Assembly: GCF_902459465.1 (NCBI RefSeq)
Contig: NW_022985708.1
Span: 1-64,000, forward strand
Reading direction: 5' to 3'
Length of the DNA: 64,000 nt
Source of the DNA: Asterias rubens
Taxonomy: Eukaryota
The notes beneath the pieces were generated by a model, which saw only the letters and a list, made by a program, of their open reading frames with translations, searched no databases and was not told the origin of the DNA. Numbering within the stretch: position 1 is the first letter of the stretch; every line of letters begins with the position of its first letter. Position numbers and translations under genes: made by a program. Below are positions 7,239-50,531 of the stretch, in pieces.

Positions 7239-10200
7239 CTTCTGTTGAGGAAATGCAAGCCAAGAAGAACGCTTCCAGGGTCAGAGTACCAAAAGTGCTA
7301 GATACCAGCGTTGAGGAGAGCTCATCAGAAGATGAGCAAGTCACACGAAAAGAAACTGCCAAGGGACGTGTAAGTTGCATTTAATTATAAAACAAATTAT
7401 GTAGTTTGTGAGCAACACCTTAGGCTTAACTGTGGTAACCATACTACCAACTACATTGAATGATTACATACAATACAAAAATGCCAAATTTTAGTTGCGA
7501 TAATCAGAACCCTCCATCCCCCGATGGTTGCAGACTGGAGGGTTGCAAGACAATCCTATGTACTACTAGTAGCAAATCACTGATGTGATACTTTATTATT
7601 AGCCGTGTTCGCATTGGACTTATTTTGGGTAAACTAACCGATCAAATGGGCAACTTAACCATTTTAAGTCCATTGCGAGCAGCCCAGGAAGTTGTCCTCC
7701 CTTGTAACTTACCTGACCCGACTGGGTAGTTTAACCACTTCTGCCCGGTTAAATTGACCAGGTTAGTTTAACCGAGCCGAAAGGTCCAGTGCAAGCGAGA
7801 TCTTGAACACGGCTTAAGACTGTTTTGTCAGACTTTTACCACATTTACCACTTTCAAAAATCATGACACACATTCTAAGAACTTTAGGATTTTATCTTTA
7901 ATGTGTAATGAATCAATTTAGAACACTTAAACTAAAAACATCATCAATAAGATTTTAAGAAAACAAATTAATAATAGAAATACATTGTCGTTTCACTTAT
8001 AATCGGTTCCCTTGATTTAATTGCTAACCTTTCTGACGATATGCTTTCTAATTAAGTGGAATGCAGTATGCACCCACCCCTTATGTTATGCAAATGGTCA
8101 TCAGGGTCGACATGACACTGCTTGCACAGAAAGCTTTTGGTTACCACCATTTATAATGTCAAGCTTTGTTTACATTTAATTTAAATTGTAGAAAGAGCAA
8201 AAACGGGACCAAATAGCTTCTAGGCAAAAGAGCTTAAAGTCCATAATATCGGAGAATATTGCCAAAAAGAAGGCGTCGCCCCTCTTCCCTTCAGAAGATC
8301 AGCCAATGACCACTTGTGAACACAGTGATTGTGTCTCGAAGTTGCAGAGATCAAAAAGAAAGCACAAGGAGGTACACGCCAAGAACAGCGAGCTGGAGCA
8401 GGAAAATAAGAAACTCAAGACATCAGTTCTTGAGTTGCAAAACTTAAATAAAGACCTCCAACAACAGCTATTAAAGACTCTGAGTGAAAAAACACAAGGT
8501 AAGCTATGGGAAGATCAAAATCAAAAGTTTCTACATCTTTTGGGCAGCAGAATTAAAGGTACGGTGGACTATCCATGATGACTTGACTATAATTAGATTC
8601 ATTTGAAACTATAGGATTGAAGCCGGAGGCATTTTACAATTAGTATAAAACCCATGACATTTTTTTGCTTGTTCTGTTTGGTCATTTATAAGAAAATAAC
8701 AAAATGCTTTCTCTGCCCTGAGCCCCTATAGGTAATTTTTGGGCATTGTATTGAGAAACAAAATCAGCTCACTATCGCTGTGTTTTTGAAAAGTACATGA
8801 CATCAGAAATTCATTTTTTTTTAGTTACCATCTCTCAATTAAGTTCTGACATTCTGATTAATAAGGCCTTTTTTTTCAAGATGGCAAAAATCTTTACCAC
8901 CTGATTTAATATGAAAAAGGTAAAGGTTTCACTCAATTCAATGTTTTCCCGATGTGGATTTTATTATAAATTAATTATTTTTTAACCACAACATTCCCGT
9001 TCCACAAAGAGCTGACATGCTAAAATCCTTGACTCGAAATATTAATGAATTCCATTTTCACCATACCCAGAAGACAACATGCAATTTTTTTATGCTGGAA
9101 AAGTTATGTACCCTGTTTTGGAAATATTGTTTCAGTCGTGTCTAAAAATCCACCAGCAAAACAACGATCCGAGGAGCTGGTTGTTTCTACTGAAGATAGT
9201 GAAGCTAGTATCTCACAAGCCTCCAATTATGTTGAAGAGGATGGAATGGTAAGAAGTTTTTTGTTGTTTTAAGTGCATGTTTAAAAGAAAATTTAAAGGG
9301 AAGTCTACCCTTACTAAAGTCTTCGCTAATTCAAACTTAACATTAAATTACAGAATACAAAACATAGTACATATACCTGAGCAGGTAATTCAATGCACCA
9401 CGATTTTGATGTCAAATTTTCTTAGAGTGAAGGAGACTGCCAGTTGTATACATGTAAATGTATAGTGCATATGTGTACATAAATTGTGGTTTTTACTCAC
9501 AGATTTCAATTGGTGCTGGGATCAGCTTGACATCTATCCAGTGGGATGCACTGCAATGCCAGAAAAAGCATTCACTCTTCGTCAAAGGTCTGGCTGTGGC
9601 AGTTTGGGGGACTGGCAATTTGAAAGACAGGTCGGTTGAGGGAAAAGTGTGTCCCCGATACAAATCAACACGCGAAGCCAGGGCTCCCTTAAGTCCCCAG
9701 AAGGTCAAGGCTATGAAAGGTATGTGTATCCAATTTCACTGGTTTAGAGTTGAACACAAATTCATAAACAATTACTGCAGTTTCAGACAGACAAACCTAA
9801 AGATGAATTACCCGATCTTCTGAATGAGAAGATGGAAAGAAGAACAACAAAACGTATAGCCTTGATTCAAGTCTGTTGGCGTAGTGTACCCCGGCCCGGT
9901 GCGGCACGATTTAGCAACAACTGCAGTGCATACACTGTAAAAAGTGGCCGCACTTCATGCACTTGTAGGTGCATGGGAATTGGTACAAGCTGCACATGAA
10001 GTGTGCATGTAGTTGCATATTGACACCTGAGAAGCTTGATGCGATGTGAAATAGCTGAAGAACAACACCTTATGTGCTTGATGAAGCAGTGATGTACCTG
10101 AAGTGATAGCTAATACAGATTTTGACTATACTTAAGGCACTTGAGGTACTTAGGATTAGCGTATGTGTGTCATTTCATACCTCACGTGTATTAAAACTCT

Positions 10201-13200
10201 CACCTCAGCCAACGGCCTTCAGCTGAGCAGCTTCTTGGCACACCTGAAGCACATCATGTATTTAACACACCAAAACGTGTACTACCTCAGGCGCCAAGGT
10301 AGCACCTGGTGCACTATGAATACCGCGCTTATTAAAATACACTACAAAGTGAAGTACCCCAGGCGACGAGGTAGCACCTGATGTACTATATGAATACCCT
10401 ACTTACACAAATAGACAAGAAGTGAAGTACCTTAGGCGCCAAGGTAGCACCTGATGCACTATGAATACCGCGCTTATATAAAATACATAAATAATTGAAG
10501 TACCTCAGGCGCCAAGATAGCACCTCGTGCACTATAAACACCGCACTTGTAAAAATACACCAATAATTAAAGTGCCTTAGGCGCCAAGGTAGCACATGAT
10601 GTACTATGAACACCGCGCTTATAAAAATACACCACAAGGTGAAGTACCTTAGGCAACAAGGTAGCACCTGATGCACTATGAATACCACGCTTATAAAAAT
10701 ATACCACAAAGGGAAGTACCTCAGGCGACGGTAGCACATGATGCACTACGCCTAAAAAAACCACACACATCAGAATTGAAGTATTGCAGGTGCCAATTGG
10801 TAGCACCTGATTCACTATGAATACCTCGCTTATAAAACAACACAACCATAAAGTATTTCAGGTAACAAGGTATAGCACTGATGTATTATGAATAGGCCTA
10901 CCTCGATTATAAAGAAGTGAAGTAGGCCTATACCTTGGGTACCAATATAAGTACCTGATGTAGCCTACTATGGTTGCATCAGGTGGCAAGGATAGCACCT
11001 GATGTATTGAGTCATGGGAGTATAAAAAGGATTTGTGTGTGCATGGGCGGGCCGGGCAAGGGGATCAGGGCTGGTGGTCATGATTCCTTCACGAACTTCA
11101 TGCCGTCAGAAATCTAGAGCCCGCGTATACCAATATCACAATGTCGGCTGAAGCACCTGAAGCAATATCCCGCCCTTTTTGATCACATGACAGGGTCTTA
11201 CAATGTTGGCTGAAGCACCTGAAGCAATATCCCGCCCTTTTTGATCACATGACAGGGTCTTACAATGTTGGCTGAAGCACCTGAAGCAATATCCCGCCCT
11301 TTTTGATCACATGACAGGGTCTTACAATGTTGGCTGAAGCACCTGAAGCAATATCCCGCCCTTTTTGATCACATGACAGGGTCTTACAATGTTGGCTGAA
11401 GCACCTGAAGCAATATCCCGCCCTTTTTGATCACATGACAGGGTCTTACAATGTTGGCTGAAGCACCTGAAGCAATATCCCGCCCTTTTTGATTACCAGG
11501 GTCTTATTGGTGTATTAATTTTTACAAAGACGTTTACAATACTTTTATTTTACAATAACCAGTAGGCCTAAAATTCTATAAAATTATAGAACTACCATTT
11601 TGACTATGTGGATTATGTATAAAAATAAAGTAGTTTCTGCTGGCATGCATCACCATTTTTAAATAATGAACTATTTTAAAAACTTGATTATTTTTCCTCC
11701 TGCGCGCGCACGGCACACTTCACTACGCGGCTGTGTCGACATGTCCTAACATGTAAACGCGTTACGCGAATGCTGCGTGTGTGTGTGCGTGTGTGTGTAA
11801 CTGCCTCCAAACGTGGACCCTCACCAGAATACACACCTTCCAAACGGGGACAACACAGGAACCGTGGACGTCCACGTTTTTAATTATGCAATTTTCGTGA
11901 AATATTCAGTCATCTGAGGGCGCTCTATAGATTTTAAGCTTATCAGGCAGTTGTCCACGTTTGGATAGTACAAACTGGAATTCGGTGTGTGTTCATACCC
12001 CCTAATTCCTTGTCGTATGACAAATTTGTATATTAATGCTTGCGCGCGATTCAGGTGCCCCCTCAAGCGGTGGATCTTTGACAATCACTGGGCGCTATGG
12101 AAACAGTGCGCGCCAAACGCCTGCCTGCATTTTATGATGTCCTCGCTTCATCGAGTAAATTTCTGGTGCAAGACAGCGACGTATAAATGACATATTTTTG
12201 TACATTTACCAGGTATTTAAACATTCATGTTCGTTTTAATTTTACTGTTAACCCTTTTATATTATCTATTTTGTCCACCAAGGTTGTGGTTTACATGCAT
12301 GGCAAGAAAATACGACTAATTAAAGAAGTAAAAATTCCCCCACATTGCATATGAAGAGTATGTTTTTTTTTTTTATACTGTATGTACTAGTACGTCCACT
12401 TACTTTATGTACATGTACATGTACTTAGGCCTACACGTACACGTTAAAATTAAACACTAGTTAAGTTTTACTGTACTCGGAATAAGCATTACTGTTCGAT
12501 GAAAATGGCTGGCTGCATACATCTGTGTTGTAACGTCAACGATGAGAAAATCAAAGTTCTGCAGAATTACACACGAAGATTGGTTGTTGCTGTAACTGTC
12601 CTTTTTATTTTAGTGGCATTTTTGGTTGTGTTCAGTATTGTCGAAGCATTTATGTAAAGATAGTATAAATTAATTTGAACTCGGTGCCACTACATTACAC
12701 TAGTGACTAGGACAACATCAATCAGTGCTAGGCAGTTACAATCAAACATAATTTACAAGCATGCCATAGGAGTTCAGCCTACTTTTCTACATTTAAGGAG
12801 ACCTGGTCATCATCTGATCCTCCACTCTCAAATGGTAGGCCCTATGGAAATATAATTTATGTTTTTCTTCATTCATGAACAAAAGTAACTTTGTCAGTTT
12901 CTCATATTCCAGATTTCTAATTTATTTAAAGGACTAGTATTGTTGTTCACTATTAACTAATTGATGGGGGTTATTAAGTAGCTAATGTATTCTTAGCTCA
13001 TGTCATGGTCATGTCAAATGGAGGATCAAGGGTTTTGCAACTAGGGCTTAGCCTTAGTTAGTAGTGGTGAGTTGTCTACATGTGAGTTGTCTACATGTGA
13101 CCAACATAAGTTATGTTGGTCACATGTACATGTAGACAACTCACATGTAGTATCTCACCACTACTTACTATTCCTCACATTCTATGTCAATGTCAAGTAG

Positions 13201-16200
13201 CTAGTTAGACAAAATGTTCCGGTAATTTGGTGACACAAATTCAATTTTGAGGATCAGGTTGGCTTGGTGATTTCATTCCCTGCCTTTCACCTCTGCATAC
13301 ACGGGTTCGAATCCCAGGAGCCATGCATGTGGTTGGGGTTTCCCTACCTGATTGCAGGGGATTTCTTCATTTTTTTGTTTTTTCGCCCACATCTTAAACT
13401 GAACATTTCTTCACAAATCCTATTCGTTAATGGCACTAATTGTGCTGTTGTTTGATACAAAAATAAATAAATAATTAATAAAATGTTTGTGCCCATTATA
13501 GTCACAATCCAATTTCATGATGTTTTGTATTGAATGCAAAAGTGCCAGTATTTGTTAACACAACTGTCAAAATTGTCCAACCTTTTTTGTATACACAAAA
13601 GTTACTTTTAAGCTTCCGATTAGTGGAATGAAATCACTTAAAATTGTTGCTTTAAAAAATGTAACATGGATGTGTTGCTAAAGGTTCAGTCAAGTTGTCA
13701 AAAATCGTGCCAAACATTTATGTATTTCCCTTAGTGATTCAGTAAAACTAAAAGCTTAAGGAGTCCAAAGTATTTTTGGGCTAATGGTGACAAAGGTTTA
13801 AGAGACTTTTTATCCAAGGCTACACTACAAGTATAATATATTAGGGTTTTAGTATTATTTGTTAATACTATAGTGATGTGTTTTGTATCAAATCACAGAA
13901 TATGCCTTTACCGAGAAGAAGAGTAGCTCCATTAGCCGAAGCCAAACAGTTTTGTGCATCAGGAGTAGACCCAGATGGGTTCGTTCGAAAATTTGTCAAC
14001 GACAAAATAGGTAAGCTAAGTACATGTATGTATGTTGCAAGGAAATACATTATCGGCCGTTTATGTTGCTAAAAAGAATTGTAGTTTTGGGGCTGACATG
14101 AATTTTCATCATGTTAAAGATTTTTCTGACTTCTGGTTTTTGTTTTTCAGGGTATGGTCTGTTCACAACCAAACAGTTTCAAAAGGAAAACTTCCTTTTA
14201 GAGTATAGAGGAGAAGTCGCTTGTGGACAAGACAGCGAGGACAGCAGCGAAAATTGCTATGAGTTCTTATTTCAACATAATGGGGTTGACTATAGGTAAG
14301 TGCATAATGAGACAATTATTCAACAGCAAAGTCATAATGCTGGTTTTGTTACTTTGTACACTACTAGTTAATAATGATCAAGTGAACAAAACAATGGGCT
14401 GGAATAACCAATAAGTTATTCTTAATCTATGCTTTGCCCACCAATTGAATCAAAACAATCGCTGTACATTTTTAAACACCTGTAAATATTCTAAGCTAAT
14501 TAATAATTTGTGGTTATAAAGTTTGAGAAACATTTATCGCTATATCAAAAGAGTCGTAAACTATATAGGTACATCTAGATTGATTAGTTTAGTTTGTAAC
14601 TTCAAGATGGTTGGCCTATTTCTGAGCCAAATAAAATGGGAAAGTTACCGTAAAATTCAAGTACTGTATCACCATTTGTTAAAACATGATACAAAAAACC
14701 TTATGAATCAAGTATACTCTGAAGTAAACAATAATTTTTTTCTTGTTTTTCTTCCTTAACAGGATTGATGCATCAAGGAAAGATTCGTGTCTGGCCAGAT
14801 ATATTAATGATGATGCAAAGCAACCAAACTGCAGAATGAAAAAAATACTAATTGACAATTACCCTCATCTGTGTCTGTTTGCCTTGGAAAACATTGATCT
14901 GGATGAAGAAATCAGATATGATTATGGTCCAGGAGAATTTTCATGGCGAAAGGTATGAAGTAATTTAGTTTTATAGTAACTGGAAATAATCAGTTTGAAC
15001 AAATTGCTCTCCACAGCCAAAATTCATCTTTATTTTTGAGAACATTTCATTTGAAGTTGAAGTATTTTTTAAACTGTTGTTTCAGAGACTGCCCTCAATC
15101 TAATTTCTGCTAATTCAAGTAAAGAACTTTGTTGCATGGTTAAATCACTGTTGTGTGAAAGTATTTAGGATATTTTGTGGCAAATTGAAGTATGCATAAA
15201 AAAGAGGGTTAATTAAGTCGATACTTTTCTTGAAGATGTTAAGAGTCAGTTCAGGTAACTATTTGACATAGTTGCTCACGGTCAAAAAATAATTTTTTTT
15301 TATACTTTGTGGGTGGAAGGGCCTTGGGGTGCAAGTAAACAAAATTGCATTTTCAATTCTATATATAGCCCGTTGCCATGGTTACGGCTCATTTTGTTTT
15401 TTGGCCATTTTAGGCCGATTTTGGGGTCTGAAAAACTGGTTTTTAGCTCATATTTACAACTCCACCCCACCAAAATGCAAAATTATTTCAAAAAACCTTT
15501 TATATCACTACAAAGTATCATCCTTGGCCTTCCTTGAGAAAAAAAAGTATTGCTTTAAATTTCACCCTTGTGCTATTTTTGCATCATGCATTACAGTATG
15601 TTTTTAGAACTTGCAAAATTGACATTTTTGCCCTATTTTTGGACCCCAAAATGTCAACTTGCCAGGGGTCTCAGAAACCAGTTTTTCAGACCCCAAAATC
15701 GGCCTAAAATGGCCAAAAAACAAAATGAGCCGTAACCATGGCAACGGGCTATATATAGAATTGAAAATGCAATTTTGTTTACTTGCACCCCAAGGCCCTT
15801 CCACCCACAAAGTATTAAAAAAATTAATTTTTTGACCGTGAGCAACTATGTCAATTATTTACCTGAACTGACTCTGTTAAGAACACATGTTTATACCATT
15901 TTACTACAAAACCTAACTTTAAGGACTATCTTCCATGCAACTATTGAAGTTGTCCATGTATAATATTATTATTACGTGTAATCTTTTCTTTTTTTAGGAC
16001 AACCACAGAGAAGATGAGACATCAAATGAAGATGAGGCATTTTGTGATCCAGGCATTTCCAGCAATTCTTCTAGAGATGGTGGTTATGTAGATCCTGCTG
16101 CTGGTGGCTTTGTTGTGGATGAGGCATCTTGTGATCCAGGCATTCCCAGCAATTCTTCTAGAGATGGTGGTTATGTAGATCCTGCTGCTGGTGGCTTTGT

Positions 16201-19200
16201 TGTGGATGAGGCATCTTGTGATCCAGGTATTCCCAGCAATTCTTCTAGAGATGGTGGTTATGTAGATCCTGCTGCTGGTGGCTTTGTTGTGGATGAGGCA
16301 TCTTGTGATCCAGGCATTCCCAGCAATTCTTCTAGAGATGGTGGTTCCGTAGATCCTGTTGCTGGTGGCTTTGTTGTGGATGAGGCATCTTGTGATCCAG
16401 GCATTCCCAGCAATTCTTCTAGAGATGGTGGTTCCGTAGATCCTGTTGCTGGTGGCTTTGTTGTGAATGAGGCATCTTGTGATCCAGGTATTCCCAGCAA
16501 TTCTTCTAGAGATGGTGGTTCTGTAGATCCTGCTGCTGGTGGCTTTGTTGTGAATGAGGCATCTTGTGATCCAGGCATTCCCAGCAATTCTTCTAGAGAT
16601 GGTGGTTCTGTAGATCCTGTTGCTGGTGGCTTTGTTGTGGATGAGGCATCTTGTGATCCAGGCATTCCCAGCAATTCTTCTAGAGATGGTGGTTCCGTAG
16701 ATCCTGCTGCTGGTGGCTTTGTTGTGAATGAGGCATCTTGTGATCCAGGTATTCCCAGCAATTCTTCTAGAGATGGTGGTTCTGTAGATCCTGTTGCTGG
16801 TGGCTTTGTTGTGGATGAGGCATCTTGTGATCCAGGCATTCCCAGCAATTCTTCTAGAGATGGTGGTTCCGTAGATCCTGCTGCTGGTGGCTTTGTTGTG
16901 AATGAGGCATCTTGTGATCCAGGCATTCCCAGCAATTGTTCTAGAGATGATAGTACTGCAGATTATGCTGCTGGGGGCTTTATTAGGGATGAGGCATCTT
17001 GTGATCCAGGCACTCTATGCCATTCTTCTGGAGATGCAAGTCCTGATGACACTGCTAAGGGCTCTGTTGCAGAATCTTTAGACACTTTTGACAACACAGC
17101 TACTCCTGTATTGTTCCAACTCGGACAAGAAGTGACAGATTTAGTCACATGGGTTAATGAAAACAACTCGGATTTGGATGACCCTTCCAGGGCTTGTAAA
17201 AAATACAGTGTTTTTTCCAAAACCCAAGAGGATGCTGACCTTCATGATCCCGATTTTTTCGTTCCAGAATCATCGGATGAAGCACCCAAGATTAACATTA
17301 TTCCTCTTCCTGTCAGAAGAAGGCATGGGGTCCAAAGCAACAGAAGGCAATATTCTCTGGGTAATCATCTAATACCCCAGTATGATTCTTTCTATGATTC
17401 AGATGTTGAAAGTGATGTTGAAGATTCTGGTTCAGATTTTGTTCCTGTTTCTGCCGATGAAAGTGATGTTGAAGATTCTGGTTCAGATTTTGTTCCTGTT
17501 TCTGCTGATGAAAGTGATAACGAATTTGCTTTGGCTGCTAGATCTACTCCAGTGACTAGGGCTACAAAACAAATTACTAACTCAAAGCAAATAACAGACC
17601 CAAGTGATAAAGACCATCCTGATGAAGACGATTCTGGCATGGTATATGAGAATGAGGAAGTTTCTGAAAGCATTGCTGATAACGAAGTTTCAGGCACACT
17701 GACAGTAGCAAACACTTCCAAAGGTCATCATCAAACTACAAATTTAGGCTCACCTGGTCAAGTTCCTGTAGTCTCCAGTTCTACTTCATTGAATACATCA
17801 GACATTGAAGTACTAACCACTTCAAATGAAAGAGGTAAGCGCAGTTGGGACAAGCCTCAGTTTTGTCCATTCTGTCTGATTCCACAAAAGAAGTTGCCAC
17901 GGCATTTAGCATCTATTCACAAAGAGGAACTACAAGTAGAGCAGTGGCTTGCCACAAAAGACAACAGAGAACGGACAAAGCAGCTTACTATTATGAGGAA
18001 CTATGGAAACTTTCTTCATAATGCGAAAGTACTTGACGAGGGAAAGGGCACTCTTATCGTAGTGTATAGGCCCTCATATAAAGTTAATCCCACTGACTAT
18101 TTGCCTTGCACCAACTGCTTTGGCTATTTTGCACAAAATGATTTATGGAAGCATAAATGCTGCCAGACAGTTGATGTTGAGGTAAATGATGCAGAAGAAC
18201 CATATCAAAAGAAAAGAAAAACTGGACTAAGAAAAGCTAGCAGAATGATGCTGCCAACCAAACCAGGTGTTAGTCAGCGAACCCACCAAATATTGTCCAG
18301 CCTGAAAAGTGACAATATAAGCAGACTTGTCCGATCAGACCGACTGATTACGATGTTTGCAGAGAAGTTGACAAAGAAGCATGGTCACTCAAAAGATCAG
18401 GAAGGCTACATAAGACAGCGGTTGCGTGAGGTGGCCAGAATGGTTTTAGAGTACAGACTGTTCACTCAGCATTCTAATGCTATGTTAGCTGATCTCATTT
18501 GTCCAGAGAAATTCAATGAAGTCATTGAAGCAACAAGACGAGCAGCAGGATTTCAAGAGGAAACCAATTTATACACAACCCCAAGCCTTGCACTGAAAAT
18601 AGGACATAGCCTGAAGTCATGTGCAGAAATTCTAAGAGGAGATGCACTTTTGTCCAGGGACACAGTTCTTGAGAAGGATTGTAAGGCTGTAATATCATTG
18701 TACAACTTGAATTGGGAAGGCGAAGTAAGCCACCATGCTCTGAGAACATTGCATGAAGTCAAGAGGAACAATCCTAAGTTGTTGCCGTTAACTGGAGATA
18801 TTGTTAAATTATCAAGGTACCTCAAGAATCAAGTACAAGAAAGGCACAAAGAGCTGCAGAAAACTAACAAGGATGTGCCCAAAGTTTGGACAAAGTTGGC
18901 TGAACTTCTTCTGACACAAATCATTGTGTTCAACCGTAAAAGGCCTGGAGAGGTATCGAAGATGACCTTGAGTGATTACAGCAAGTGTGCTAATGGGGAA
19001 ACCTGTGTTGTTGATGGCGCCTTGTCACCACTGGAGAAGGCACTGTGTAAGGTGCTATGGAGAGTCGAAATTATCGGAAAACGTTTGCGAACCGTTGTAG
19101 TACTATTCACTGCCCAGATGAAAGAGGCCCTTGACACACTGAGGAAAAGAAGAATTGATGCAGGCATAGATGTCAACAATGTCTTCCTGTTTAGTAATCA

Positions 19201-22200
19201 GAGAGGACTGGCACACATTAGGGGGACTGACACACTTAGAGAACATGCCTCAAAGTGCAAAGCAAGTAATCCTGAATTCTTACGTGCAACCAGACTCAGA
19301 AAACACATTGCAACAGTATCGCAAGTGATGAACCTCCAGGACAATGAGCTTGACCTGCTGGCAGGCTTCCTTGGACATGATGTGAGAACACACCGTGAGT
19401 TCTACCGCATGCCTGAGTCCACACTTCAAGTTGCAAAACTTTCAAAGGTCCTTCTGAAGATGGAGAAGGGTGATGTACAGGGATTAGCTGGTAAAAGCCT
19501 GAAAGATGTGGAGCTGGACCCTAGTGAAGGTATGATAGATACAACTACTCTAAATTTACCAATTCGATTTGAAACATTAGTTGATACAGGTCAATTTTGA
19601 TTGAGCCTGAACTGTGTCTGACCTTTATTGCATGTTTAATCATTAATCAAAATTGAATGGATACTTAAGTTCAGAAACAAATCTGATAAAACACATATTA
19701 TGGTATAAAGGTTTATGTAAACCTACACAATACTTTTATGGTAGCAACATACATTGTGATGTGAAACATAATTTGACATGGACCCTTTTGAGGGAGGCTT
19801 TAAAGTATTACATTTAAAACATGTTTTTTTATAGAATACGATACAGATGAGAAATCAGACGATGACAGTGATCCTGAACCTGAGACATCTGTACCAGAGA
19901 AAACAAAAGGTTAGTACATGAGACTAGGATCAGTCACAAATACTACAAAGTTTTACTAAAAACTTGACTGGTTGGCTCAGTGTAGGCATGTGTTCATATT
20001 CTGGGCTAGATGCTGTGTAGCAGCTTTGATGTGTCACTGACAGCCACAAGTTGGTCATTTTACCTTGCCAGCCATGTTCCAACCATTTGTACTGAAATCG
20101 TTGAAATGTGAATGTTTTCATGACTTAATGCTATGGAATATAAAATGGAGTCTAAACATTCCTTTCTAATCAGTTTTTTTTTCTGACTTGCCACAATTAT
20201 AGCCATAACTTGCAACCACCCCATGTAAAATGAAACTAAACTGATGACAACTTTAAATCATAAATGTAACCATGCACTGATTTGTTTTTAGTTAGATTTA
20301 CAAAAGTAACACCAGCTATGTTTATGTGCTAAAGAATGTGCTTTTAAAACTCTTTAGATGTTCTTTGTCCCCTCTACAAAAAGACAAACTAATCTTCCTT
20401 AGCTTCACCTTACAATCAATTTTGCATCAGCCACATAGGGTACACAATTTTGTTCATGTCCCTTGTTTTCCCCTTGGTCCTCATCATGGTCAGTTGCATG
20501 CTGACTATACCTATCATGCTGTGAGTGCCTGCATTACAAACCAAATCATCAGTATTGATATTATTATGTTTCATTTCTATTTGAGGTGTTTAATAATTAA
20601 TTTATTGCATTTTTTCACTTCATACAGAACCAGCAGAAACAGAAGCTGCACAACAACAACGGAAGAAGCAATGGACATTGGCTGAAAAACAAGCAGTCGT
20701 GAGACATCTTGGAAGCTTCTTAAGGTCAAGGAAAGTTCCAGGGAAGGGACCGATTTCTGCTCTCATGAAAGCTGAACCCCGTCTTTTTACTGATCGTTCC
20801 TGGAGAAACGTCAAGGACTTTGTCAGAAACCAAGTCAGGAAAAAAGATCAGTTTAGCTTCCTTAAGAATCTTTGAAGAAAGCAACTATGACAAAGCCAGC
20901 TATTTGAAACTGTGTTTGCACGTATACAGCATATTAAGTTTAATTTTAATTCTTCGTTTTTCTTCTTGCCAAGATGAGAGAACAAGCAGCCATTAATCGA
21001 AGTTTATTTCCAGTAACGAGTAGTTGCAAACGATTAAGCTTAATACTGAAATATTGTTTTATCTTACTCAAAAGTTTACTTATTTATTTGGTTTAAATGC
21101 ATTTTCATTTGCATGTATTGTTTGTTAAAAAGAAATGTAGCAATTACATGAAAGTTCCAACATTTTGTGAGGTTTAGGGCTAAAGTACAGTTAGCTTTCT
21201 TAAAAACTTTTGAAGTTAGAAACTAACAAAGCCAGCTATTTGAAACTGTGTTTGAACAGTTGAATGAAGTGGTTCATCTTCATACAGGCCATTGCAGTTA
21301 AATGATAATTAACAATCAAAAAGATCAGCTCAATTATTTTGTTTGTGTTTTCCGTGCCAAGTTGGGAATTTATAGTGTACTGTGTAATGCAAAGAACTTA
21401 CTATTAATGCAGCGTGTTCATATATTTTGAAAACTCAGTGCTGGTAAAAGCAAGACTGGCTTATACCTCATAAAGATTAATTACATGTATGTTATTAACT
21501 ATTCTTTGTTTGTTTTTCAATGCCAAGTTGGGATTGTGTGGTAATTGCCATGTTTAACAGAGAGTGTGTATACAAAGCGACCATTTTGGTTTTCATATTT
21601 GTCAGGCCGAAGTAATTTTATTTGTTTCACATTATACATTTGTGTTTGTAAATGCAATTTTATTTTCCTTTGCTGCACGTATTCAGCATATTAAGTTTAA
21701 TTTTAATTCTTCGTTTTTCTTCTTGCCAAGATGAGAGAACAAGCAGCCATTAATCGAAGTTTATTTCCAGTAACGAGTAGTTGCAAACGATTAAGCTTAA
21801 TACTGAAATATTGTTTTATCTTACTCAAAAGTTTACTTATTTATTTGGTTTAAATGCATTTTCATTTGCATGTATTGTTTGTTTTAAAAGAAATGTAGCA
21901 ATTACATGAAAGTTCCAACATTTTGTGAGGTTTAGGGCTAAAGTACAGTTAGCTTTCTTAAAAACTTTTGAAGTTAGAAACTAACAAAGCCAGCTATTTG
22001 AAACTGTGTTTGAACAGTTGAATGAAGTGGTTCATCTTCATACAGGCCATTGCAGTTAAATGATAATATTAACAATCAAAAAGATCAGCTAAATTATTTT
22101 GTTTGTGTTTTCCGTGCCAAGTTGGGAATTTATAGTGTACTGTGTAATGCAAAGAACTTACTATTAATGCAGCGTGTTCATATATTTTGAAAACTCAGTG

Positions 22201-25200
22201 CTGGTAAAAGCAAGACTGGCTTATACCTCATAAAGATTAATTACATGTATGTTATTAACTATTCTTTGTTCGTTTTTCAATGCCAAGTTGGGATTGTGTG
22301 GTAATTGCCATGTTTAACAGAGAGTGTGTATACAAAGCGACCATTTTGGTTTTCATATTTGTCAGGCCGAAGTAATTTTATTTGTTTCACATTATACATT
22401 TGTGTTTGTAAATGCAATTTTATTTTCCTTTGCTGCACGTATTCAGCATATTAAGTTTAATTTTAATTCTTCGTTTTTCTTCTTGCCAAGATGAGAGAAC
22501 AAGCAGCCATTAATCGAAGTTTATTTCCAGTAACGAGTAGTTGCAAACGATTAAGCTTAATACTGAAATATTGTTTTATCTTACTCAAAAGTTTACTTAT
22601 TTATTTGGTTTAAATGCATTTTCATTTGCATGTATTGTTTGTTTTAAAAGAAATGTAGCAATTACATGAAAGTTCCAACATTTTGTGAGGTTTAGGGCTA
22701 AAGTACAGTTAGCTTTCTTAAAAACTTTTGAAGTTAGAAACTAACAAAGCCAGCTATTTGAAACTGTGTTTGAACAGTTGAATGAAGTGGTTCATCTTCA
22801 TACAGGCCATTGCAGTTAAATGATAAATAACAATCAAAAAGATCAGCTAAATTATTTTGTTTTGTTTTCCGTGCCTAGTTGGGAATTTATAGTGTACTGT
22901 GTAATGCAAAGAATTACCATTAATGCAGCGTGTTCATATTTTAAAACTCAGGACAAGTTAGACAAAGCCTGGTTTCAAATTACATTGTACTATGTGTTAT
23001 GTTCTTTTGTTTTGTCTCCTGTGCCAATTTTGAATTTATTGTGTACCGTGTAATGCAAAGATTTGACCTTTTATGCATTGTGTACTCATGAAAGCTGAAC
23101 CACATATGTTTACTAATCGTTCCTGGAGAAACGTGAAAGACTTTATCAGAAACCAAGACAGAAAGAAAAATCCATTTAGCTTTCTTAAAAATCTTTAAGT
23201 TAGAAACTAACAAAGCCAGCTATTTGAAACTGTGTTTGAACAGTTGTGTGAAGTGGTTCATCTCCATACAGGCCATTGCAGTTAAATGATAAAAAACAAT
23301 CAAAAAGATGTGCTATATATATATTAATTTTGTTTGTGTTTTCCGTGTTAGGGTGCCCTTTAAAGCATGTGAATCTAGTATGGGTTGCAAGAAAAGAATT
23401 CCGCGGTAAGCAAAGCCATGAAATTGGAACTAATACACTTGTTTGTTGCAGGGGAAAGGGAGAGGTTTTTTGTTGGCCATTTTGCCATGTTGGAGTTCTT
23501 ACTAAAAAAATAAGTAACCATTTTTTGACTAGGGTTCTTTCTTAGACCTTTTGAGTTTTCGTTAAAAAAATTGATGTTAAATCCAAGGCTAATTAAAAAA
23601 TAAAAAAAAATAAAAAAAACACTCAGTTGAGTGTCCCCAAATTTTGTATTCTTAGTTGGCAGTGCTTTTAAACTGAACTCTGATGGCCATTTGGTATTTA
23701 AATGCTTGGTGACCATCGTGGGAAAGAAATGCCCTCGTCGTCCTCTCTATGAAAAAAATTCAGGATGATTAACTTTGTTTTCTTACTTAGCGTAATGAAG
23801 TCTCTGTCTCTAAAAAGGATCTAACACCAATACTTCAAGGTTTACATAAACAAGATGCTCTGTCATCAACCCGTGTCTAAACATGTACATGTACGAGGCA
23901 ACTTTTTCATGATCACTAAGTAAAGCATACAATTACAAGTTGGACAGAGGCTGGCTTCAATTGCGTGAATAAATGTTTTAATCATTTTGTGGAGTTTAAT
24001 CTGTGTGACTTTGTTTATTCATTAAATTGTTGGACCTTTATTCTTATTGTACCACCGTGGACATCTTGTGTATTATTTCCCTTTACCTCCTGGTAAGCGT
24101 GGTACTAATCCGCCGTGGACATCTTGGTCATTATTGTCCCCCTTTGTACTCTTATTATACCACCGTGGACATCTTGCTTATTATTGTCCCCCTTTGTACT
24201 CTTATTGTACCACCGTGGACATCTTGTGTATTATTTCCCTTTACCTCCTGGTAAGCGTGGTACTAATCCACCGTGGACATCTTGGTTATTATTGTCCCCC
24301 TTTGTACTCTTATTATACCACCGTGGACATCTTGTGTATTATTTCCCTTTACCTCCTGGTAAGCGTGGTACTAATCCACCGTGGACATCTTGGTTATTAT
24401 TGTCCCCCTTTGTACTCTTATTATACCACCGTGGACATCTTGTGTATTATTTCCCTTTACCTCCTGGTAAGCGTGGTACTAATCCACCGTGGACATCTTG
24501 GTCATTATTGTCCCCATTTGTACTCTTATTATACCACCGTGGACATCTTGGTTATTATTGTCCCCCTTTGTACTCTTATTGTACCACCGTGGACATCTTG
24601 TGTATTATTTCCCTTTACCTCCTGGTAAGCGTGGTACTAATCCACCGTGGACATCTTGGTTATTATTGTCCCCCTTTGTACTCTTATTATACCACCGTGG
24701 ACATCTTGTGTATTATTTCCCTTTACCTCCTGGTAAGCGTGGTACTAATCCACCGTGGACATCTTGGTTATTATTGTCCCCCTTTGTACTCTTATTATAC
24801 CACCGTGGACATCTTGTGTATTATTTCCCTTTACCTCCTGGTAAGCGTGGTACTAATCCACCGTGGACATCTTGGTTATTTTGTCCCACTTTGTAATCTT
24901 ATTATACCACCGTGGACATCTTGGTTATTATTGTCCCCCTTTGTAATCTTATATACCACCGTGGACATCTTGGTTATTATTGTCCCCCTTTGTATTCTTA
25001 TTGCACCACCGTGGACATCTTGGTTATTATTGTCCCCCTTTGTACTCTTATTGTACCACCGTGGACATCTTGTGTATTATTTCCCTTTACCTCCTGGTAA
25101 GCGTGGTACTAATCCACCGTGGACATCTTGGTTATTATTGTCCCCCTTTGTACTCTTATTGTACCACCGTGGACATCTTGTGTATTATTTCCCTTTACCT

Positions 25201-28200
25201 CCTGGTAAGCGTGGTACTAATCCACCGTGGACATCTTGGTTATTATTGTCCCCCTTTGTACTCTTATTATACCACCGTGGACATCTTGTGTATTATTTCC
25301 CTTTACCTCCTGGTAAGCGTGGTACTAATCCACCGTGGACATCTTGGTTATTTTGTCCCCCTTTGTAATCTTATTATACCACCGTGGACATCTTGGTTAT
25401 TATTGTCCCCCTTTGTAATCTTATATACCACCGTGGACATCTTGGTTATTATTGTCCCCCTTTGTATTCTTATTATACCACCGTGGACATCTTGGTTATT
25501 ATTGTCCCCCTTTGTATTCTTATTATACCACCGTGGACATCTTGGTTATTATTGTCCCCCTTTGTACTCTTTATATACCACCGTGGACATCTTGGTTATT
25601 ATTGTCCCCCTTTGTACTCTTTATATACCACCGTGGACATCTTCGTTATTATTGTCCCCCTTTGTAATCTTATTATACCACCGTGGACATCTTGGTTATT
25701 ATTGTCCCCCTTTGTAATCTTATATACCACCGTGGACATCTTGGTTATTATTGTCCCCCTTTGTATTCTTATATACCACCGTGGACATCTTGGTTATTAT
25801 TGTCCCCCTTTGTATTCTTATTATACCACCGTGGACATCTTGCTTATTATTGTCCCCCTTTGTAATCTTATATACCACCGTGGACATCTTGGTTATTATT
25901 GTCCCCCTTTGTATTCTTATTATACCACCGTGGACATCTTGCTTATTATTGTCCCCCTTTGTATTCTTATTGTACCACCGTGGACATCTTGGTTATTATT
26001 GTCCCCCTTTGTACTCTTATTGTACCACCGTGGACGTCTTGTGTATTATTTCCCTTTACCTCCTGGTAAGCGTGGTACTAATCCACCGTGGACATCTTGG
26101 TTATTATTGTCCCCCTTTGTACTCTTATTTATACCACCGTGGACATCTTGGTTATTATTGTCCCCCTTTGTACTCTTATTGTACCACCGTGGACATCTTG
26201 TGTATTATTTCCCTTTACCTCCTGGTAAGCGTGGTACTAATCCACCGTGGACATCTTGGTTATTATTGTCCCCCTTTGTACTCTTATTGTACCACCGTGG
26301 ACATCTTGTGTATTATTTCCCTTTACCTCCTGGTAAGCGTGGTACTAATCCACCGTGGACATCTTGGTTATTATTGTCCCCCTTTGTACTCTTATTGTAC
26401 CACCGTGGACATCTTGTGTATTATTTCCCTTTACCTCCTGGTAAGCGTGGTACTAGTCCACCGTGGACATCTTGGTTATTATTGTCCCCCTTTGTACTCT
26501 TATTATACCACCGTGGACATATTGTATTTCCCTCATCCTCCTGGTAAGCGTGGTACTAATCCACCGTGGACACCTTGGTTGTTCTTGTCCCTCTTTGTAC
26601 TCCTATTATACCACCGTGGACAGTATTGTGTAGTATTTTTTTCTCATTTGGGTTTAATTGTTGCCTTTGTATTGTACGCCTAACCGTACACCCCGACTTA
26701 ATGACCCCAACAGAGACTGCTGTTCAGTGTACATACACATGTATGACGTATACAGTCATGTACATGTACATGTCCACGGTGGTACAGTCAAAATCCACAC
26801 GTCCACGTTTGGCTGCCTTGTCTTCTATGTATGATATGTTTAGGTTTACGTCCACGGTTTGGTCGTGATAATTCGGCAACTCCAGAAACCCTGAACAAAA
26901 ACTTTTACCTGTTCTAATCACACATTTAATAAATGTTCAGCGTACTAGCATCTGTAATATGATAAAACAGCCTACGAGACCATCAAAATACTGCCGTCCT
27001 CGTTTGTATAGTAAGATTAATATGTCCACGGTTGCAGGTCGTTACAAGTATGGGTGTGTGTGTAATGTACATGTGTATTTTGTGTGTAATGTACATCGCA
27101 GTTAGTTTGGAAGTGTTGTAGCGGCCTGTCAGATAATAGCTATAGCAAAGCATGGCGTCCAGTAGCAGTGTTGAACTTTCTGAGCTACAGCTGAAGTCAA
27201 CTAGTGAATTGTGTGAATTTCTGCGAACACTTTCAATTCCGGAGGACGTTGTTGACAAATTTGAGAGTAAGTATAATAGTATGGCTGGTGTTGTAAATTA
27301 TTGTTCCCAAGTAATAAACAAATTGTCTTGCACAGTCACCAATGTTGACAGTACAGAAATGTCATTGTCATGACGACATGCATGATGAATGGGCATGATG
27401 AGGAAGATTGAATGATTGATAGGTTCATACATACAGTACTATTCTCTATAGCCATAGGCCTATTATAAAGTGTTAATGTTCTGGTTGTACTTGCTGGGGA
27501 GAGATGCAGAATTAAGGTTTATGTCTGGTTTGTATTTTTACCCGAAAACGGGATCAAGTCGCGTACGTTCTGGTCGTTCCCATTGACCAGCGCGCTGGTA
27601 CACGGCACTAACGTACTGTAACTCGGTACGTACAGCAATATTCCCTGACAACCAGCGGGCGGCCTTATATAGCGTAAACATAAAACTTTAACTCTAGCGC
27701 GCCGAATTTAAATTACTTTTCTTTAAAATTTACATTACAAACACATATTTTTTGTTTGGATTTTGTGGAAAATTAGACTCAACATGACATGAAAGAGGCA
27801 TAGATAACATAATTTGGGTCAGTACACTGATTGAATGATAATCATGTCAAACAAAATACATTTTCTCTACTAGGCCTACTTTAACTATCTACTTGCAGGA
27901 GATATTTTATGTGTAAACAAAAAAAAAGTTTTTTTGTGGTGTTCTGTTCTTTTGGTTTTTTTTAAAATAAGCTTTTATCATTTTAAGTAACACAGATATT
28001 TAAAAATATGGTATGTATTCCAGACCTGCAGATTAAAACATTAAAAATGCAATGCATGTTTGATATGTACAGGTGAGGGAATTTGTGGTGAAGTTCTACC
28101 ACTATCATTGGCAGAATTGATGGAACTGGCACCTCGTATCGGACCACGTCGAATACTGCAGAAGCGAATCCCTCAGCTCCTTGGATACTTGGTAACAGTT

Positions 28201-50031: not shown

Positions 50032-50531
50032 NNNNNNNNNNNNNNNNNNNNNNNNNNNNNNNNNNNNNNNNNNNNNNNNNNNNNNNNNNNNNNNNNNNNN
50101 NNNNNNNNNNNNNNNNNNNNNNNNNNNNNNNNNNNNNNNNNNNNNNNNNNNNNNNNNNNNNNNNNNNNNNNNNNNNNNNNNNNNNNNNNNNNNNNNNNNN
50201 NNNNNNNNNNNNNNNNNNNNNNNNNNNNNNNNNNNNNNNNNNNNNNNNNNNNNNNNNNNNNNNNNNNNNNNNNNNNNNNNNNNNNNNNNNNNNNNNNNNN
50301 NNNNNNNNNNNNNNNNNNNNNNNNNNNNNNNNNNNNNNNNNNNNNNNNNNNNNNNNNNNNNNNNNNNNNNNNNNNNNNNNNNNNNNNNNNNNNNNNNNNN
50401 NNNNNNNNNNNNNNNNNNNNNNNNNNNNNNNNNNNNNNNNNNNNNNNNNNNNNNNNNNNNNNNNNNNNNNNNNNNNNNNNNNNNNNNNNNNNNNNNNNNN
50501 NNNNNNNNNNNNNNNNNNNNNNNNNNNNNNN
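50032..50531. other. Assembly gap (500 N)
   Basis: Run of N. Confidence 1.

What the first reader, a model, noticed from the sequence alone, without database searches (positions are those of the whole stretch)
13902..20875. A histone-methyltransferase-like SET domain spliced in frame to a tyrosine recombinase in one transposon protein
Seen: six canonical exons give an uninterrupted 1432-aa ORF. It runs SET8-like SET (no Cys-rich pre/post-SET), 29-aa repeats and an acidic linker, two Zn-finger-like motifs (CPFC..HLASIH; CTNC..HKC), a YR core (R in NRKRPGE, K in GKR, TRLR in place of HxxR, LGHD, FYR), and a Myb/SANT-like tail. The ORF track misses the fusion because SET is split by three introns. 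Established: Cryptons use a YR, and SET8/KMT5A writes H4K20me1. Inference: the element may carry a chromatin writer tethered to its recombinase, marking its ends or target site or resisting silencing. The canonical SET NH motif reads ND here, so catalytic activity is uncertain. I recall similar predicted proteins in other animal genomes but cannot tell whether the fusion has been described functionally.
Basis: partly seen in the sequence, partly recalled or inferred. Interest (0 to 1): 0.88.

Follow-up and report, generated by a model that had tools for sequence, protein, structure and literature searches.

The report
SET-domain tyrosine-recombinase transposon gene
This sea-star DNA holds an intact, transcribed jumping gene whose single 1432-residue protein joins a histone-methyltransferase-like SET domain to a DNA-cutting tyrosine recombinase; the fusion is ancient and common in animals but is missing from the public gene model here and, as far as I could find, from the literature.

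Summary
Six GT-AG exons give a 1432-aa open frame, and transcript contigs from three runs skip exactly the three 5' introns. One contig joins SET exons 1-3 to the start of exon 4.

The domains are:
- an N-terminal KMT5A/SET8-like SET domain;
- a recombinase half that folds as a two-domain tyrosine recombinase, with R, K, R, H and Y invariant or nearly so in the family;
- a tail that is a three-helix homeodomain/Myb-like bundle.

The gene sits in a ~15.3-kb element (11796-27053) with ~22-bp imperfect inverted ends, clusters of a GTCCACG(G/T)T motif, a 52-copy motif satellite and (GT)n on both sides. A second sea star, a sea urchin and a killifish show the same plan. This matches the published description of CryptonV, a group of microsatellite-targeting tyrosine-recombinase transposons. 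I could not compare it with the Repbase sequences.

SET and recombinase co-diverge (r = 0.96). SET is under purifying selection (dN/dS 0.12). "ND" in place of "NH" is the family norm.

This copy is about single-copy in Asterias rubens, and RefSeq annotates only residues 898-1432. What SET does is untested. Other first-reader notes of this scan cover this same stretch.

The parts
11774..11798 (.). left flanking (GT)n microsatellite
   Evidence: the only (GT)>=5 runs in window 1-40000 are at the two element ends
11796..11818 (+). left terminal inverted repeat TGTAACTGCCTCCAAACGTGGAC
   Evidence: 18/23 match to the reverse complement of the right end; conserved in Patiria miniata
11807..11964 (.). 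left subterminal cluster of the GTCCACG(G/T)T motif (11810-, 11861-, 11870+, 11953+), including a back-to-back palindromic pair at 11860-11879
12180..12212 (+). 3' part of a 5'UTR exon (its start was not determined); GT donor at 12213, spliced to 13899
   Evidence: (loose ends at 13896 in X4, X5, X6, X8)
13899..14010 (+). exon 1 (ATG at 13902); SET N-flank
14151..14295 (+). exon 2; SET first half (GxG, EYRGE)
14763..14952 (+). exon 3; SET second half (RYINDD, EIRYDYG, conserved W)
15998..19529 (+). exon 4: repeats, acidic linker, two zinc-binding clusters, tyrosine recombinase
16031..17036 (+). 11.6 in-frame copies of an 87-bp (29-aa) repeat
17864..17920 (+). zinc-binding cluster 1, C-x2-C-x9-H-x4-H
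18107..18160 (+). zinc-binding cluster 2, C-x2-C-x11-H-x-C
18302..18865 (+). recombinase N-terminal (core-binding-type) helical domain
   Evidence: aligned to Xer/Cre residues ~1-130
18866..19465 (+). recombinase catalytic domain: R1130 (18941), K1176 (19079), T1246/R1249 (19289/19298), H1275 (19376), Y1284 (19403)
19835..19909 (+). exon 5, acidic
   Evidence: (loose end at 19529)
20628..20875 (+). exon 6: three-helix homeodomain/Myb-like tail and stop codon
24054..26622 (-). internal satellite (50/108/216/472-bp periods) carrying 52 same-strand copies of GTCCACGGT
26772..27033 (+). right subterminal motif cluster (26772, 26801, 26850, 27024)
27024..27046 (+). right terminal inverted repeat GTCCACGGTTGCAGGTCGTTACA, followed by AAGTATGG
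27054..27066 (.). right flanking (GT)n

Best explanation
Window 11796-27053 is an intact, transcribed, low-copy DNA transposon of Asterias rubens that moves (or moved until recently) by a tyrosine recombinase. It is of the microsatellite-targeting kind published as CryptonV.

Its only gene makes one 1432-aa protein with these parts, in order:
- a KMT5A/SET8-like SET domain;
- a fast-evolving repeat and acidic linker;
- two zinc-binding clusters;
- a two-domain tyrosine recombinase (R-K-TxxR-H-Y);
- a homeodomain/Myb-like three-helix tail.

Shown here: the fusion, the splicing, the folds, the conserved ends, the (GT)n flanks in four species, co-inheritance of SET and recombinase, and purifying selection on every domain.

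Inferred mechanism: the recombinase, probably with the zinc clusters and/or tail reading the GTCCACG(G/T)T motif, synapses the two inverted ends and excises a circle. In the circle the two ~22-bp arms face each other across a spacer that contains AAGTATGG plus GT repeats, which is a lox-like site. Strand exchange with a genomic (GT)n tract needs only GT-repeat identity in the overlap. That would explain both the microsatellite target and the (GT)n on both sides after insertion.

Inferred role of SET: it is an integral working part of the transposase. It either methylates a lysine (H4K20 by analogy with KMT5A) or grips the histone tail on nucleosomal donor or target DNA. The 52-site satellite could concentrate the protein on the element.
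For: Fusion and expression:
- The open frame is complete.
- Transcript contigs skip the three 5' introns, and one contig spans exons 1-4.
- RefSeq P0192 equals model residues 898-1432.

Recombinase:
- The AF2 model has pLDDT 82.8.
- Foldseek against PDB: the top 49 hits are all tyrosine recombinases.
- Foldseek against AFDB Swiss-Prot: the top 30 are all XerC/D/S, matched over nearly their whole length.
- VIA-align: Z 11.1 to the XerD catalytic domain at rmsd 3.0 A, and Z 10.8 to XerH over 261 residues.
- 5 of 44 members reach Pfam Phage_integrase, best E 4.8e-5.
- R371, R490 and H516 (numbering of alignment A1) are invariant; K417 and Y525 are kept in at least 90% of the 44 sequences.

SET:
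- The top 14 PDB sequence hits are KMT5A/SETD8, E ~1e-14.
- GxG, N100, E134, Y137 and Y139 are invariant.
- dN/dS is 0.12, against 0.09-0.10 for the recombinase and 0.41 for the linker.
- SET and recombinase distances correlate at r = 0.96; Mantel 0 of 2000 permutations.
- SET-bearing members occur all over the recombinase tree.

Element:
- The window is colinear with the Patiria miniata locus only between 11777 and 27063.
- The termini are 75-82% conserved although dS is ~1.
- Imperfect TIRs abut (GT)n in the window, Patiria, S. purpuratus and Nothobranchius.
- In the window the motif occurs only inside the element.
- No RT or other long ORF lies in the element apart from frames through the satellite.

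Family:
- 14,024 cluster representatives match at E <= 1e-3.
- At least 6 lineages occur in S. purpuratus, and the gene tree disagrees with the species tree.

Literature: CryptonV families insert specifically in microsatellites (PMC8869645, citing Repbase Rep 2012 12:2034).
Against: - This copy is at about single-copy depth in a DNA run of the species (226.7 against 163.7 for unique flank).
- No second copy, empty site or circle junction was seen, so current mobility is not shown.
- No contig bridges the (GT)n tract.
- The window and Patiria copies could be orthologous. With dS ~1 the flanks would be unalignable either way, and the flanks hold no usable host genes.
- The first His of the usual HxxR box is Thr throughout the family.
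- The SET 'NH' His is Asp, so catalysis is not assured.
- Similarity to Repbase CryptonV sequences could not be tested.
- A second A. rubens family member (L005) has neither SET within 10 kb upstream nor (GT)n.
Confidence: 0.7

Rival explanations
1. It is a domesticated, immobile host gene. An old transposon was fixed in sea stars, and its SET-recombinase protein is kept for a host function such as H4K20-type methylation in development. This is how PMC10368294 reads the related 'KMT5A-like' genes.
For: - About single-copy depth.
- Expressed and spliced.
- Strong purifying selection on every domain.
- Intron positions in SET are the same as in Patiria.
- The nearest relative is in another sea star, as expected for an orthologue.
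- Related urchin and Hydractinia genes are developmentally regulated (PMC10368294).
Against: - The non-coding termini, TIRs and motif arrays are conserved at a divergence (dS ~1) at which the introns no longer align, so cis-acting recombination sites are under selection.
- The catalytic R, K, R, H and Y are intact and conserved across the family.
- The same ends-plus-(GT)n plan is seen in urchin and fish copies.
- Thousands of family clusters, many lineages per genome and a gene tree unlike the species tree fit a transposon family.
Confidence: 0.2
2. The main product is the recombinase alone, like the 535-aa RefSeq model that starts at Met898. SET-containing mRNAs are a minor read-through or upstream-exon form, so the two activities are mostly not tethered.
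For: - RefSeq annotates only residues 898-1432.
- No single contig crosses the tandem repeats at 16116-16908.
- Some relatives are annotated in isoforms with and without SET that have identical recombinase parts.
Against: - The frame is open from the ATG at 13902 to 20875.
- SET exon 3 is spliced to exon 4 in three runs, at depth similar to the recombinase part (about 6-7 against 8-14).
- SET and recombinase co-diverge with equal mean identity.
- Full-length SET-to-tail proteins are annotated in many phyla.
- De Bruijn contigs are expected to break at tandem repeats.
Confidence: 0.08
3. The recombinase belongs to a tyrosine-recombinase retrotransposon (DIRS, Ngaro or PAT) rather than to a DNA transposon.
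For: Such retroelements are present in this genome according to other notes of the scan.
Against: - The 15.3-kb element holds no reverse transcriptase, RNase H or gag ORF.
- Its ends are short inverted repeats next to a microsatellite, not split or inverted long repeats.
Confidence: 0.01

Closest known systems
CryptonV (Repbase group; Kapitonov & Jurka, Repbase Reports 2012, as cited in PMC8869645)
   Same: A DNA transposon that encodes a tyrosine recombinase and no reverse transcriptase, and that inserts specifically in microsatellites. Here (GT)n lies on both sides in four species. CryptonV was first described in cnidarians, and SET-first relatives of this protein were reported there too (PMC10368294).
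   Different: Sequence identity to the Repbase consensus could not be checked. I found no published statement that CryptonV proteins carry a SET domain, TIRs or internal arrays of binding motifs.
CryptonA / DUF3504 and the classical fungal Cryptons (Goodwin 2003; Kojima & Jurka 2011, PMC3212892)
   Same: A single-gene tyrosine-recombinase DNA transposon, often with introns. The proposed mechanism is a circular intermediate with site-specific integration at a short sequence shared by the element end and the target.
   Different: No Pfam DUF3504 match. It has ~22-bp inverted ends, a microsatellite target, and SET, zinc-cluster and three-helix tail modules.
KMT5A / SET8 / PR-Set7 (H4K20 monomethyltransferase)
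   Same: It is the closest solved SET domain. Both have a minimal SET without Cys-rich pre/post-SET regions. GxG, Asn, ExxYxYG and the C-flank Trp are kept.
   Different: SET is N-terminal here, not C-terminal. The His of the 'NH' motif is Asp in 35 of 41 family members. It is fused to a recombinase. The substrate is unknown.
SETMAR (primate SET-mariner transposase fusion), chromoviral integrase chromodomains, and the methyltransferase-like domain of DIRS elements
   Same: Each joins a chromatin-related module covalently to a transposase or integrase (my own knowledge).
   Different: SETMAR is a host gene that captured a dead transposase. Here the fusion lies inside the element and is inherited with it. 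Chromodomains read marks rather than write them. DIRS elements are retrotransposons.
XerC/D/H, Cre, lambda Int (bacterial and phage tyrosine recombinases)
   Same: Two-domain fold, the Lys in the beta-hairpin, the R..R..H..Y arrangement, and the flexible segment that carries the Tyr.
   Different: Only 7-17% identity. TxxR replaces HxxR. The protein also carries ~900 extra N-terminal residues and a C-terminal DNA-binding-like tail.

Membership tests
Tyrosine recombinase superfamily | Two-domain fold: helical core-binding domain plus catalytic domain | tested here: met
   only recombinases and topoisomerase IB among the top matches; Z up to 11.1
Tyrosine recombinase superfamily | Catalytic R, K (beta-hairpin), R, H/W and the Tyr nucleophile in canonical order and spacing | tested here: met
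   R1130, K1176, R1249, H1275, Y1284. H-to-Y spacing is 9, as I recall for XerD. K lies in the turn between strands 410-415 and 421-426 of the model
Tyrosine recombinase superfamily | His at the first position of the HxxR box | tested here: not met
   Thr (T487 of A1 = T1246) in at least 90% of 44 members
Tyrosine recombinase superfamily | DNA cleavage and rejoining through a 3'-phosphotyrosine | not testable with these tools
   needs biochemistry
Crypton (tyrosine-recombinase DNA transposon, broad sense) | Encodes a tyrosine recombinase but no reverse transcriptase, RNase H or LTRs | tested here: met
Crypton (tyrosine-recombinase DNA transposon, broad sense) | Mobility: copies at different loci with the same ends | tested here: inconclusive
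   Family level: yes. This lineage is about single-copy in A. rubens, and orthology with the Patiria copy is not excluded
CryptonV | Target-specific insertion in microsatellites | tested here: met
   (GT)n at both ends in 4 of 4 SET-type elements examined; not seen in L005
CryptonV | Recombinase sequence groups with Repbase CryptonV consensus proteins | not testable with these tools
   Repbase and Dfam are not available here
CryptonA / DUF3504 | Match to Pfam DUF3504 (PF12012) | tested here: not met
   no such hit for the window protein. In the alignment-wide scan it is absent from the 25 most frequent of 42 families (the other 17 were not shown)
KMT5A/SET8-type SET domain | SET fold; closest by sequence to KMT5A; no Cys-rich pre/post-SET | tested here: met
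KMT5A/SET8-type SET domain | Canonical NH(S/C) cofactor-pocket motif | tested here: not met
   N-D; KMT5A 'RLINHS' aligns to 'RYINDE/D'
KMT5A/SET8-type SET domain | H4K20 monomethylation activity | not testable with these tools
   needs an enzyme assay
Myb/SANT domain (tail) | Match to a Myb/SANT profile | tested here: not met
   no Pfam Myb/SANT hit in any of 38 tails
Myb/SANT domain (tail) | Three-helix homeodomain-like fold | tested here: inconclusive
   pLDDT 88.7 with three helices. The matches are nearly all homeodomains or Myb domains (TM by target up to 0.72), but E is 0.9-10
DIRS/Ngaro/PAT retrotransposons | Reverse transcriptase and RNase H beside the recombinase | tested here: not met

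The most novel reading that the evidence does not exclude
Many animal phyla host a very large superfamily of tyrosine-recombinase transposons whose recombinase is a platform for interchangeable chromatin and protein-modification modules. The modules seen here are a SET methyltransferase (the commonest), a protein kinase, an OTU deubiquitinase, a chromodomain and BRCT. On this reading the SET module is catalytically active despite ND-for-NH, and is needed for excision or integration on nucleosomal DNA or for setting the chromatin state of the element through its 52-site binding array. The 'expanded KMT5A-like H4K20 methyltransferase genes' reported as switched on at embryonic genome activation in Hydractinia and sea urchin would then be these transposons.
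Probability: 0.3. Interest if true: 0.85.

Novelty: new variant of a known kind. Interest (0 to 1): 0.62.

Why it matters
Transposases that carry their own histone-modifying domain are almost unknown. Chromoviral integrases read marks, and SETMAR is a host fusion.

Here a SET domain has been inherited together with a tyrosine recombinase across echinoderms, hemichordates, molluscs and fishes. It evolves at the same rate as the recombinase and is under purifying selection. It is therefore very likely a working part of the transposition machinery.

That makes one question directly testable: does a mobile element write, or hold on to, a histone mark in order to cut, paste or protect itself?

Three further consequences follow:
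- Dozens of 'KMT5A-like' genes per genome in sea urchin and hydrozoans, published as candidate developmental H4K20 methyltransferases, should probably be re-read as transposon genes.
- The public gene model at this A. rubens locus lacks the first 897 residues of the protein.
- The element gives a concrete lox-like model for how a eukaryotic recombinase targets (GT)n microsatellites, which may interest people who build site-specific integration tools.

Tried and rejected
- A profile search of the recombinase half against PDB sequences gave no recombinase hit, only weak zinc-finger matches. Fold comparison was needed.
- Pfam on the window's recombinase half gave nothing significant.
- Pfam on the tail gave nothing.
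- Flank synteny with Patiria: no flank ORF of the window hits the Patiria locus. But the Patiria flanks are short and gene-free, and the window's right flank is another transposase-like gene (zf-BED ORF plus a 652-aa ORF). The test cannot separate orthology from transposition.
- DNA runs at the left end: contigs stop at the (GT)n tract, so no empty site or alternative flank could be read. Depth suggests about one copy.
- Exact-sequence look-ups of P0004 and P0003 found no locus.
- Literature: no paper in the library holds 'Crypton' together with 'SET domain' in a relevant sense. 'CryptonV' occurs in 3 papers, none of which describes its protein. Kojima's 2020 review is not held.
- DIRS-type retroelement: rejected, no RT.
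- Separate SET and recombinase genes: rejected on the spliced contigs.
- A second A. rubens member (L005) shows neither SET nor (GT)n, so these traits are not universal in the wider family.

Full report
**1.

Joining the six exons 13902-14010, 14151-14295, 14763-14952, 15998-19529, 19835-19909 and 20628-20875 gives 4299 nt. That is 1432 codons plus a stop, with no internal stop, and every border is GT..AG. The big exon alone is a 1161-aa ORF in the mechanical list. Pfam SET matches exon 2 (E 2e-3) and exon 3 (E 7.6e-8). The 29-aa repeats are an 87-bp unit present 11.6 times at 95% identity.

**2. Transcripts show the fusion**

Runs X4, X5, X6 and X8 (the coded species 'organism A') hold contigs that cover the exons and skip the introns. 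The joints are 14010/14151, 14295/14763 and 14952/15998, all GT..AG. One 590-nt contig (X5 record 8) runs through exons 1, 2, 3 and into exon 4. Most intron stretches have almost no depth, so these are RNA.

Loose ends at 13896 match 12180-12209. This reveals a 5'UTR exon that ends at 12212 (CAG|GT) and is spliced to 13899. Loose ends at 19529 read the first bases of exon 5.

The RefSeq protein LOC117299409 of Asterias rubens (P0192, 535 aa) equals model residues 898-1432 exactly. This identifies the species and independently confirms the exon 4-5-6 splices. It also shows that the public model lacks SET, the repeats, the linker and the zinc clusters.

Two caveats apply. No contig crosses the tandem repeats at 16116-16908, and some contigs retain intron 4.

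**3. The C-terminal half is a tyrosine recombinase**

Sequence profiles barely see it. The window's own sequence has no Pfam hit, no PDB recombinase turns up by profile search, and 5 of 44 relatives reach Phage_integrase, best E 4.8e-5.

The fold is clear:
- The AlphaFold model of residues 760-1325 has mean pLDDT 82.8.
- Its 49 best Foldseek matches in the PDB are all tyrosine recombinases: XerH, XerD, XerA, Cre, lambda Int and Tn1549 Int.
- The best 30 in AFDB Swiss-Prot are all XerC/D/S, matched over nearly their whole length.
- VIA-align gives Z 11.1 to the XerD catalytic domain (rmsd 3.0 A over 155 residues) and Z 10.8 to XerH (261 residues).

In a 44-sequence alignment (A1), R371, R490 and H516 are invariant, and K417 and Y525 are kept in at least 90%. 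These are R1130, R1249, H1275, K1176 and Y1284 of the protein.

The Lys sits in the beta-hairpin turn, and the Tyr sits in a low-confidence flexible segment. From my knowledge of solved recombinases, both are typical. The first His of HxxR is Thr in the whole family. Two Cys/His clusters upstream are conserved throughout (seven of eight residues invariant).

**4. SET**

The N-terminus of the Patiria relative is 64% identical to the window's. Its best PDB matches are 14 KMT5A/SETD8 sequences (E ~1e-14), followed by MLL1, ASH1L and EZH2.

Across 41 family SET domains, GxG, Y55, N100, E134, Y137 and Y139 are invariant. The position of the 'NH' His is Asp in 35 and His in 6. So ND is a conserved family trait, not decay.

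**5. Tail**

Residues 1352-1432 are conserved in 38 relatives, with the consensus K..WT..E..AV..HL...KLPGK...RTW.NIKDFVRN. They match no Pfam family. They fold with pLDDT 88.7 into three helices. The structural neighbours are nearly all homeodomains and Myb domains bound to DNA (TM by target up to 0.72), but the E-values are not significant.

**6. The gene lies in an element with defined ends**

A (GT)n tract (11774-11798) is followed by TGTAACTGCCTCCAAACGTGGAC. At the other end, GTCCACGGTTGCAGGTCGTTACA-AAGTATGG is followed by (GT)n (27054-27066). The two ends are 18/23 inverted repeats.

The 9-mer GTCCACG(G/T/A)T occurs in the 64-kb window only inside the element:
- four times near the left end, including a back-to-back palindromic pair;
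- 52 times, all on one strand, in a 2.5-kb satellite at 24054-26622;
- four times near the right end.

The only (GT)>=5 runs in the first 40 kb of the window are those at the ends.

**7. The same plan in other species**

- Patiria miniata (L001, protein P0001, recombinase half 82% identical): colinear with the window from 11777 to 27063 and nowhere else. Both termini align at 75-82% and abut (GT)n.
- S. purpuratus (L002, P0027, 45% identical): an imperfect GT tract, inverted arms (..TCAATCGGGGAGG), its own motif variant CTCCAC(A/G)(G/T)T in an internal array, and a GT-rich tract at the far end.
- Killifish (L003, P0054): the gene lies between (TG)170 and (TG)234, with inverted ends GTTTTTGTGG(C/T)ATA and a satellite just inside the left end.

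Between the two sea stars dS is 0.75-2, and the introns do not align. The aligned termini are therefore under constraint.

**8. Selection and co-inheritance**

dN/dS, window against Patiria:

| Region | dN/dS |
|---|---|
| SET | 0.12 |
| Zinc clusters | 0.15 |
| Recombinase | 0.09-0.105 |
| Tail | 0.07 |
| Linker | 0.41 |

SET intron positions are the same in both species. Over 39 proteins, SET and recombinase distances correlate at r = 0.96 (Mantel 0 of 2000; r = 0.63 among deep pairs only), and mean identity is equal at 0.49 and 0.50.

On a maximum-likelihood tree of 59 recombinase halves, SET-bearing rows lie in every major clade. Several 'SET-less' rows are identical, or nearly so, to SET-bearing ones, which points to isoform or annotation differences. 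S. purpuratus has at least six interleaved lineages. This fits one old fusion inherited as a unit within a diversified transposon family.

**9. Size and modularity of the family**

The recombinase profile finds 14,024 cluster representatives (50% identity level) at E <= 1e-3, and 3,950 at E <= 1e-30.

Named hosts include sea stars, urchins, sea cucumbers, brittle stars, crinoids, hemichordates, annelids, nemerteans, molluscs, a priapulid, a beetle and many fishes.

Of 59 representatives with at least 120 residues before the recombinase, 13 have SET, 2 have BRCT and 1 has a chromodomain. Other members carry:
- a protein kinase, with SET (P0077) or without it (P0099);
- an OTU protease (P0043). 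The OTU fusion is one uninterrupted ORF on a metagenome contig, so it is not a gene-model artefact.

**10. Copy number here**

In DNA run X13, element depth is 226.7 against 163.7 for unique flank, so the element is about single-copy. Contigs stop at the (GT)n tract. A second A. rubens member (P0146, 40% identical, L005) has the recombinase and tail but no SET within 10 kb upstream and no (GT)n.

**11. What is known**

CryptonV is cited as a tyrosine-recombinase DNA transposon lineage, some of whose families insert specifically in microsatellites (PMC8869645, citing Kapitonov & Jurka, Repbase Rep 2012). Nothing else about its protein is in the papers I could search.

The 2011 Crypton survey does not mention SET. 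A 2026 paper notes that Crypton groups differ in their accessory Pfam domains (PMC13465315).

Ayers et al. 2023 (PMC10368294) found 65 KMT5A-like genes in Hydractinia, 24 in Hydra and 61 in S. purpuratus. [quoted passage not shown] The authors read them as new H4K20 methyltransferases. The present analysis indicates that these C-terminal ends are the recombinase.

In Chlamydomonas, active Cryptons integrate at a short sequence shared with the element's end (PMC9977147). This is the mechanism I extend here.

**12. Mechanism (inferred)**

Excision as a circle would bring the two ~22-bp inverted arms together across a spacer of AAGTATGG plus GT repeats. Tyrosine recombinases need identical overlap sequences in the two partner sites (established knowledge). 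A GT-repeat overlap would therefore direct integration into genomic (GT)n and leave (GT)n on both sides, as observed.

The zinc clusters and/or the three-helix tail are candidates to read the GTCCACG(G/T)T motif, and the satellite could load many protein copies. SET would then act on nucleosomes, or on a partner protein, at these sites. Whether it methylates or only binds is open.

**13. Verdict**

Mobility of this single copy and any SET activity are not shown.

It is best filed as a CryptonV-like element whose SET-recombinase architecture I could not find described as such. The main uncertainty about novelty is what the Repbase entries already say.

Noticed in passing
window 15242-15875: A 634-bp foldback, MITE-like insertion in intron 3, with 201-nt arms that are 98% complementary. 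Its depth in RNA runs (hundreds, against ~10 for the exons) shows it is highly multicopy and transcribed elsewhere.
   Followed up: partly
window 23085-23195: A second, partial copy of the last 37 codons of the tail exon (81% amino-acid identity), 2.2 kb downstream of the stop. It also matches the Patiria tail exon. It could be an alternative or decayed last exon.
   Followed up: no
window 21517-22494: A tandem duplication of ~760 bp in the 3' part of the element; identical small ORFs recur at 21517/22277 and 21564/22324.
   Followed up: no
window 19530-19834: Some transcript contigs retain intron 4 (X4 19500-19797, X5 19523-19849, X6 19508-19658). Retention would end the protein at 19600 and remove the three-helix tail.
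   Followed up: no
window 9800-11600: The left flank is repetitive: 72/145-bp repeats at 10267-10748 and 62-bp repeats (5.7 copies, 99%) at 11138-11493. DNA depth is 4-17 times the unique level.
   Followed up: no
window 28226-30724: The right flank holds a zf-BED ORF (144 aa) followed by a 652-aa ORF with no Pfam match. This is probably another transposase-type gene.
   Followed up: partly
window 17831-20875 (public model LOC117299409): The RefSeq protein for this locus is only 535 aa (model residues 898-1432). The first 897 residues, which include SET and the zinc clusters, are missing from the public annotation.
   Followed up: yes
proteins P0089 (Dissostichus), P0101 and P0106 (cyprinids); P0078 (Pimephales), P0093 (Clarias): Recombinase halves from fishes of different orders lie very close on the tree (path lengths ~0.15). 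This hints at horizontal transfer among teleosts.
   Followed up: no
L003 11559-22040: In the killifish copy the linker is built from a ~32-aa unit encoded by exon-like units that recur every ~1047 bp. Repeat-rich linkers therefore recur in this family, but by different means.
   Followed up: no
L005 (A. rubens CABPRM030000015.1, 113239-136388): A second family member in the same genome (P0146, 40% identical) has a 48-bp satellite (16.5 copies) directly upstream of the gene, but no SET and no (GT)n within 10 kb.
   Followed up: partly
window 50032-50531: A run of 500 N (assembly gap or mask); left untouched.
   Followed up: no
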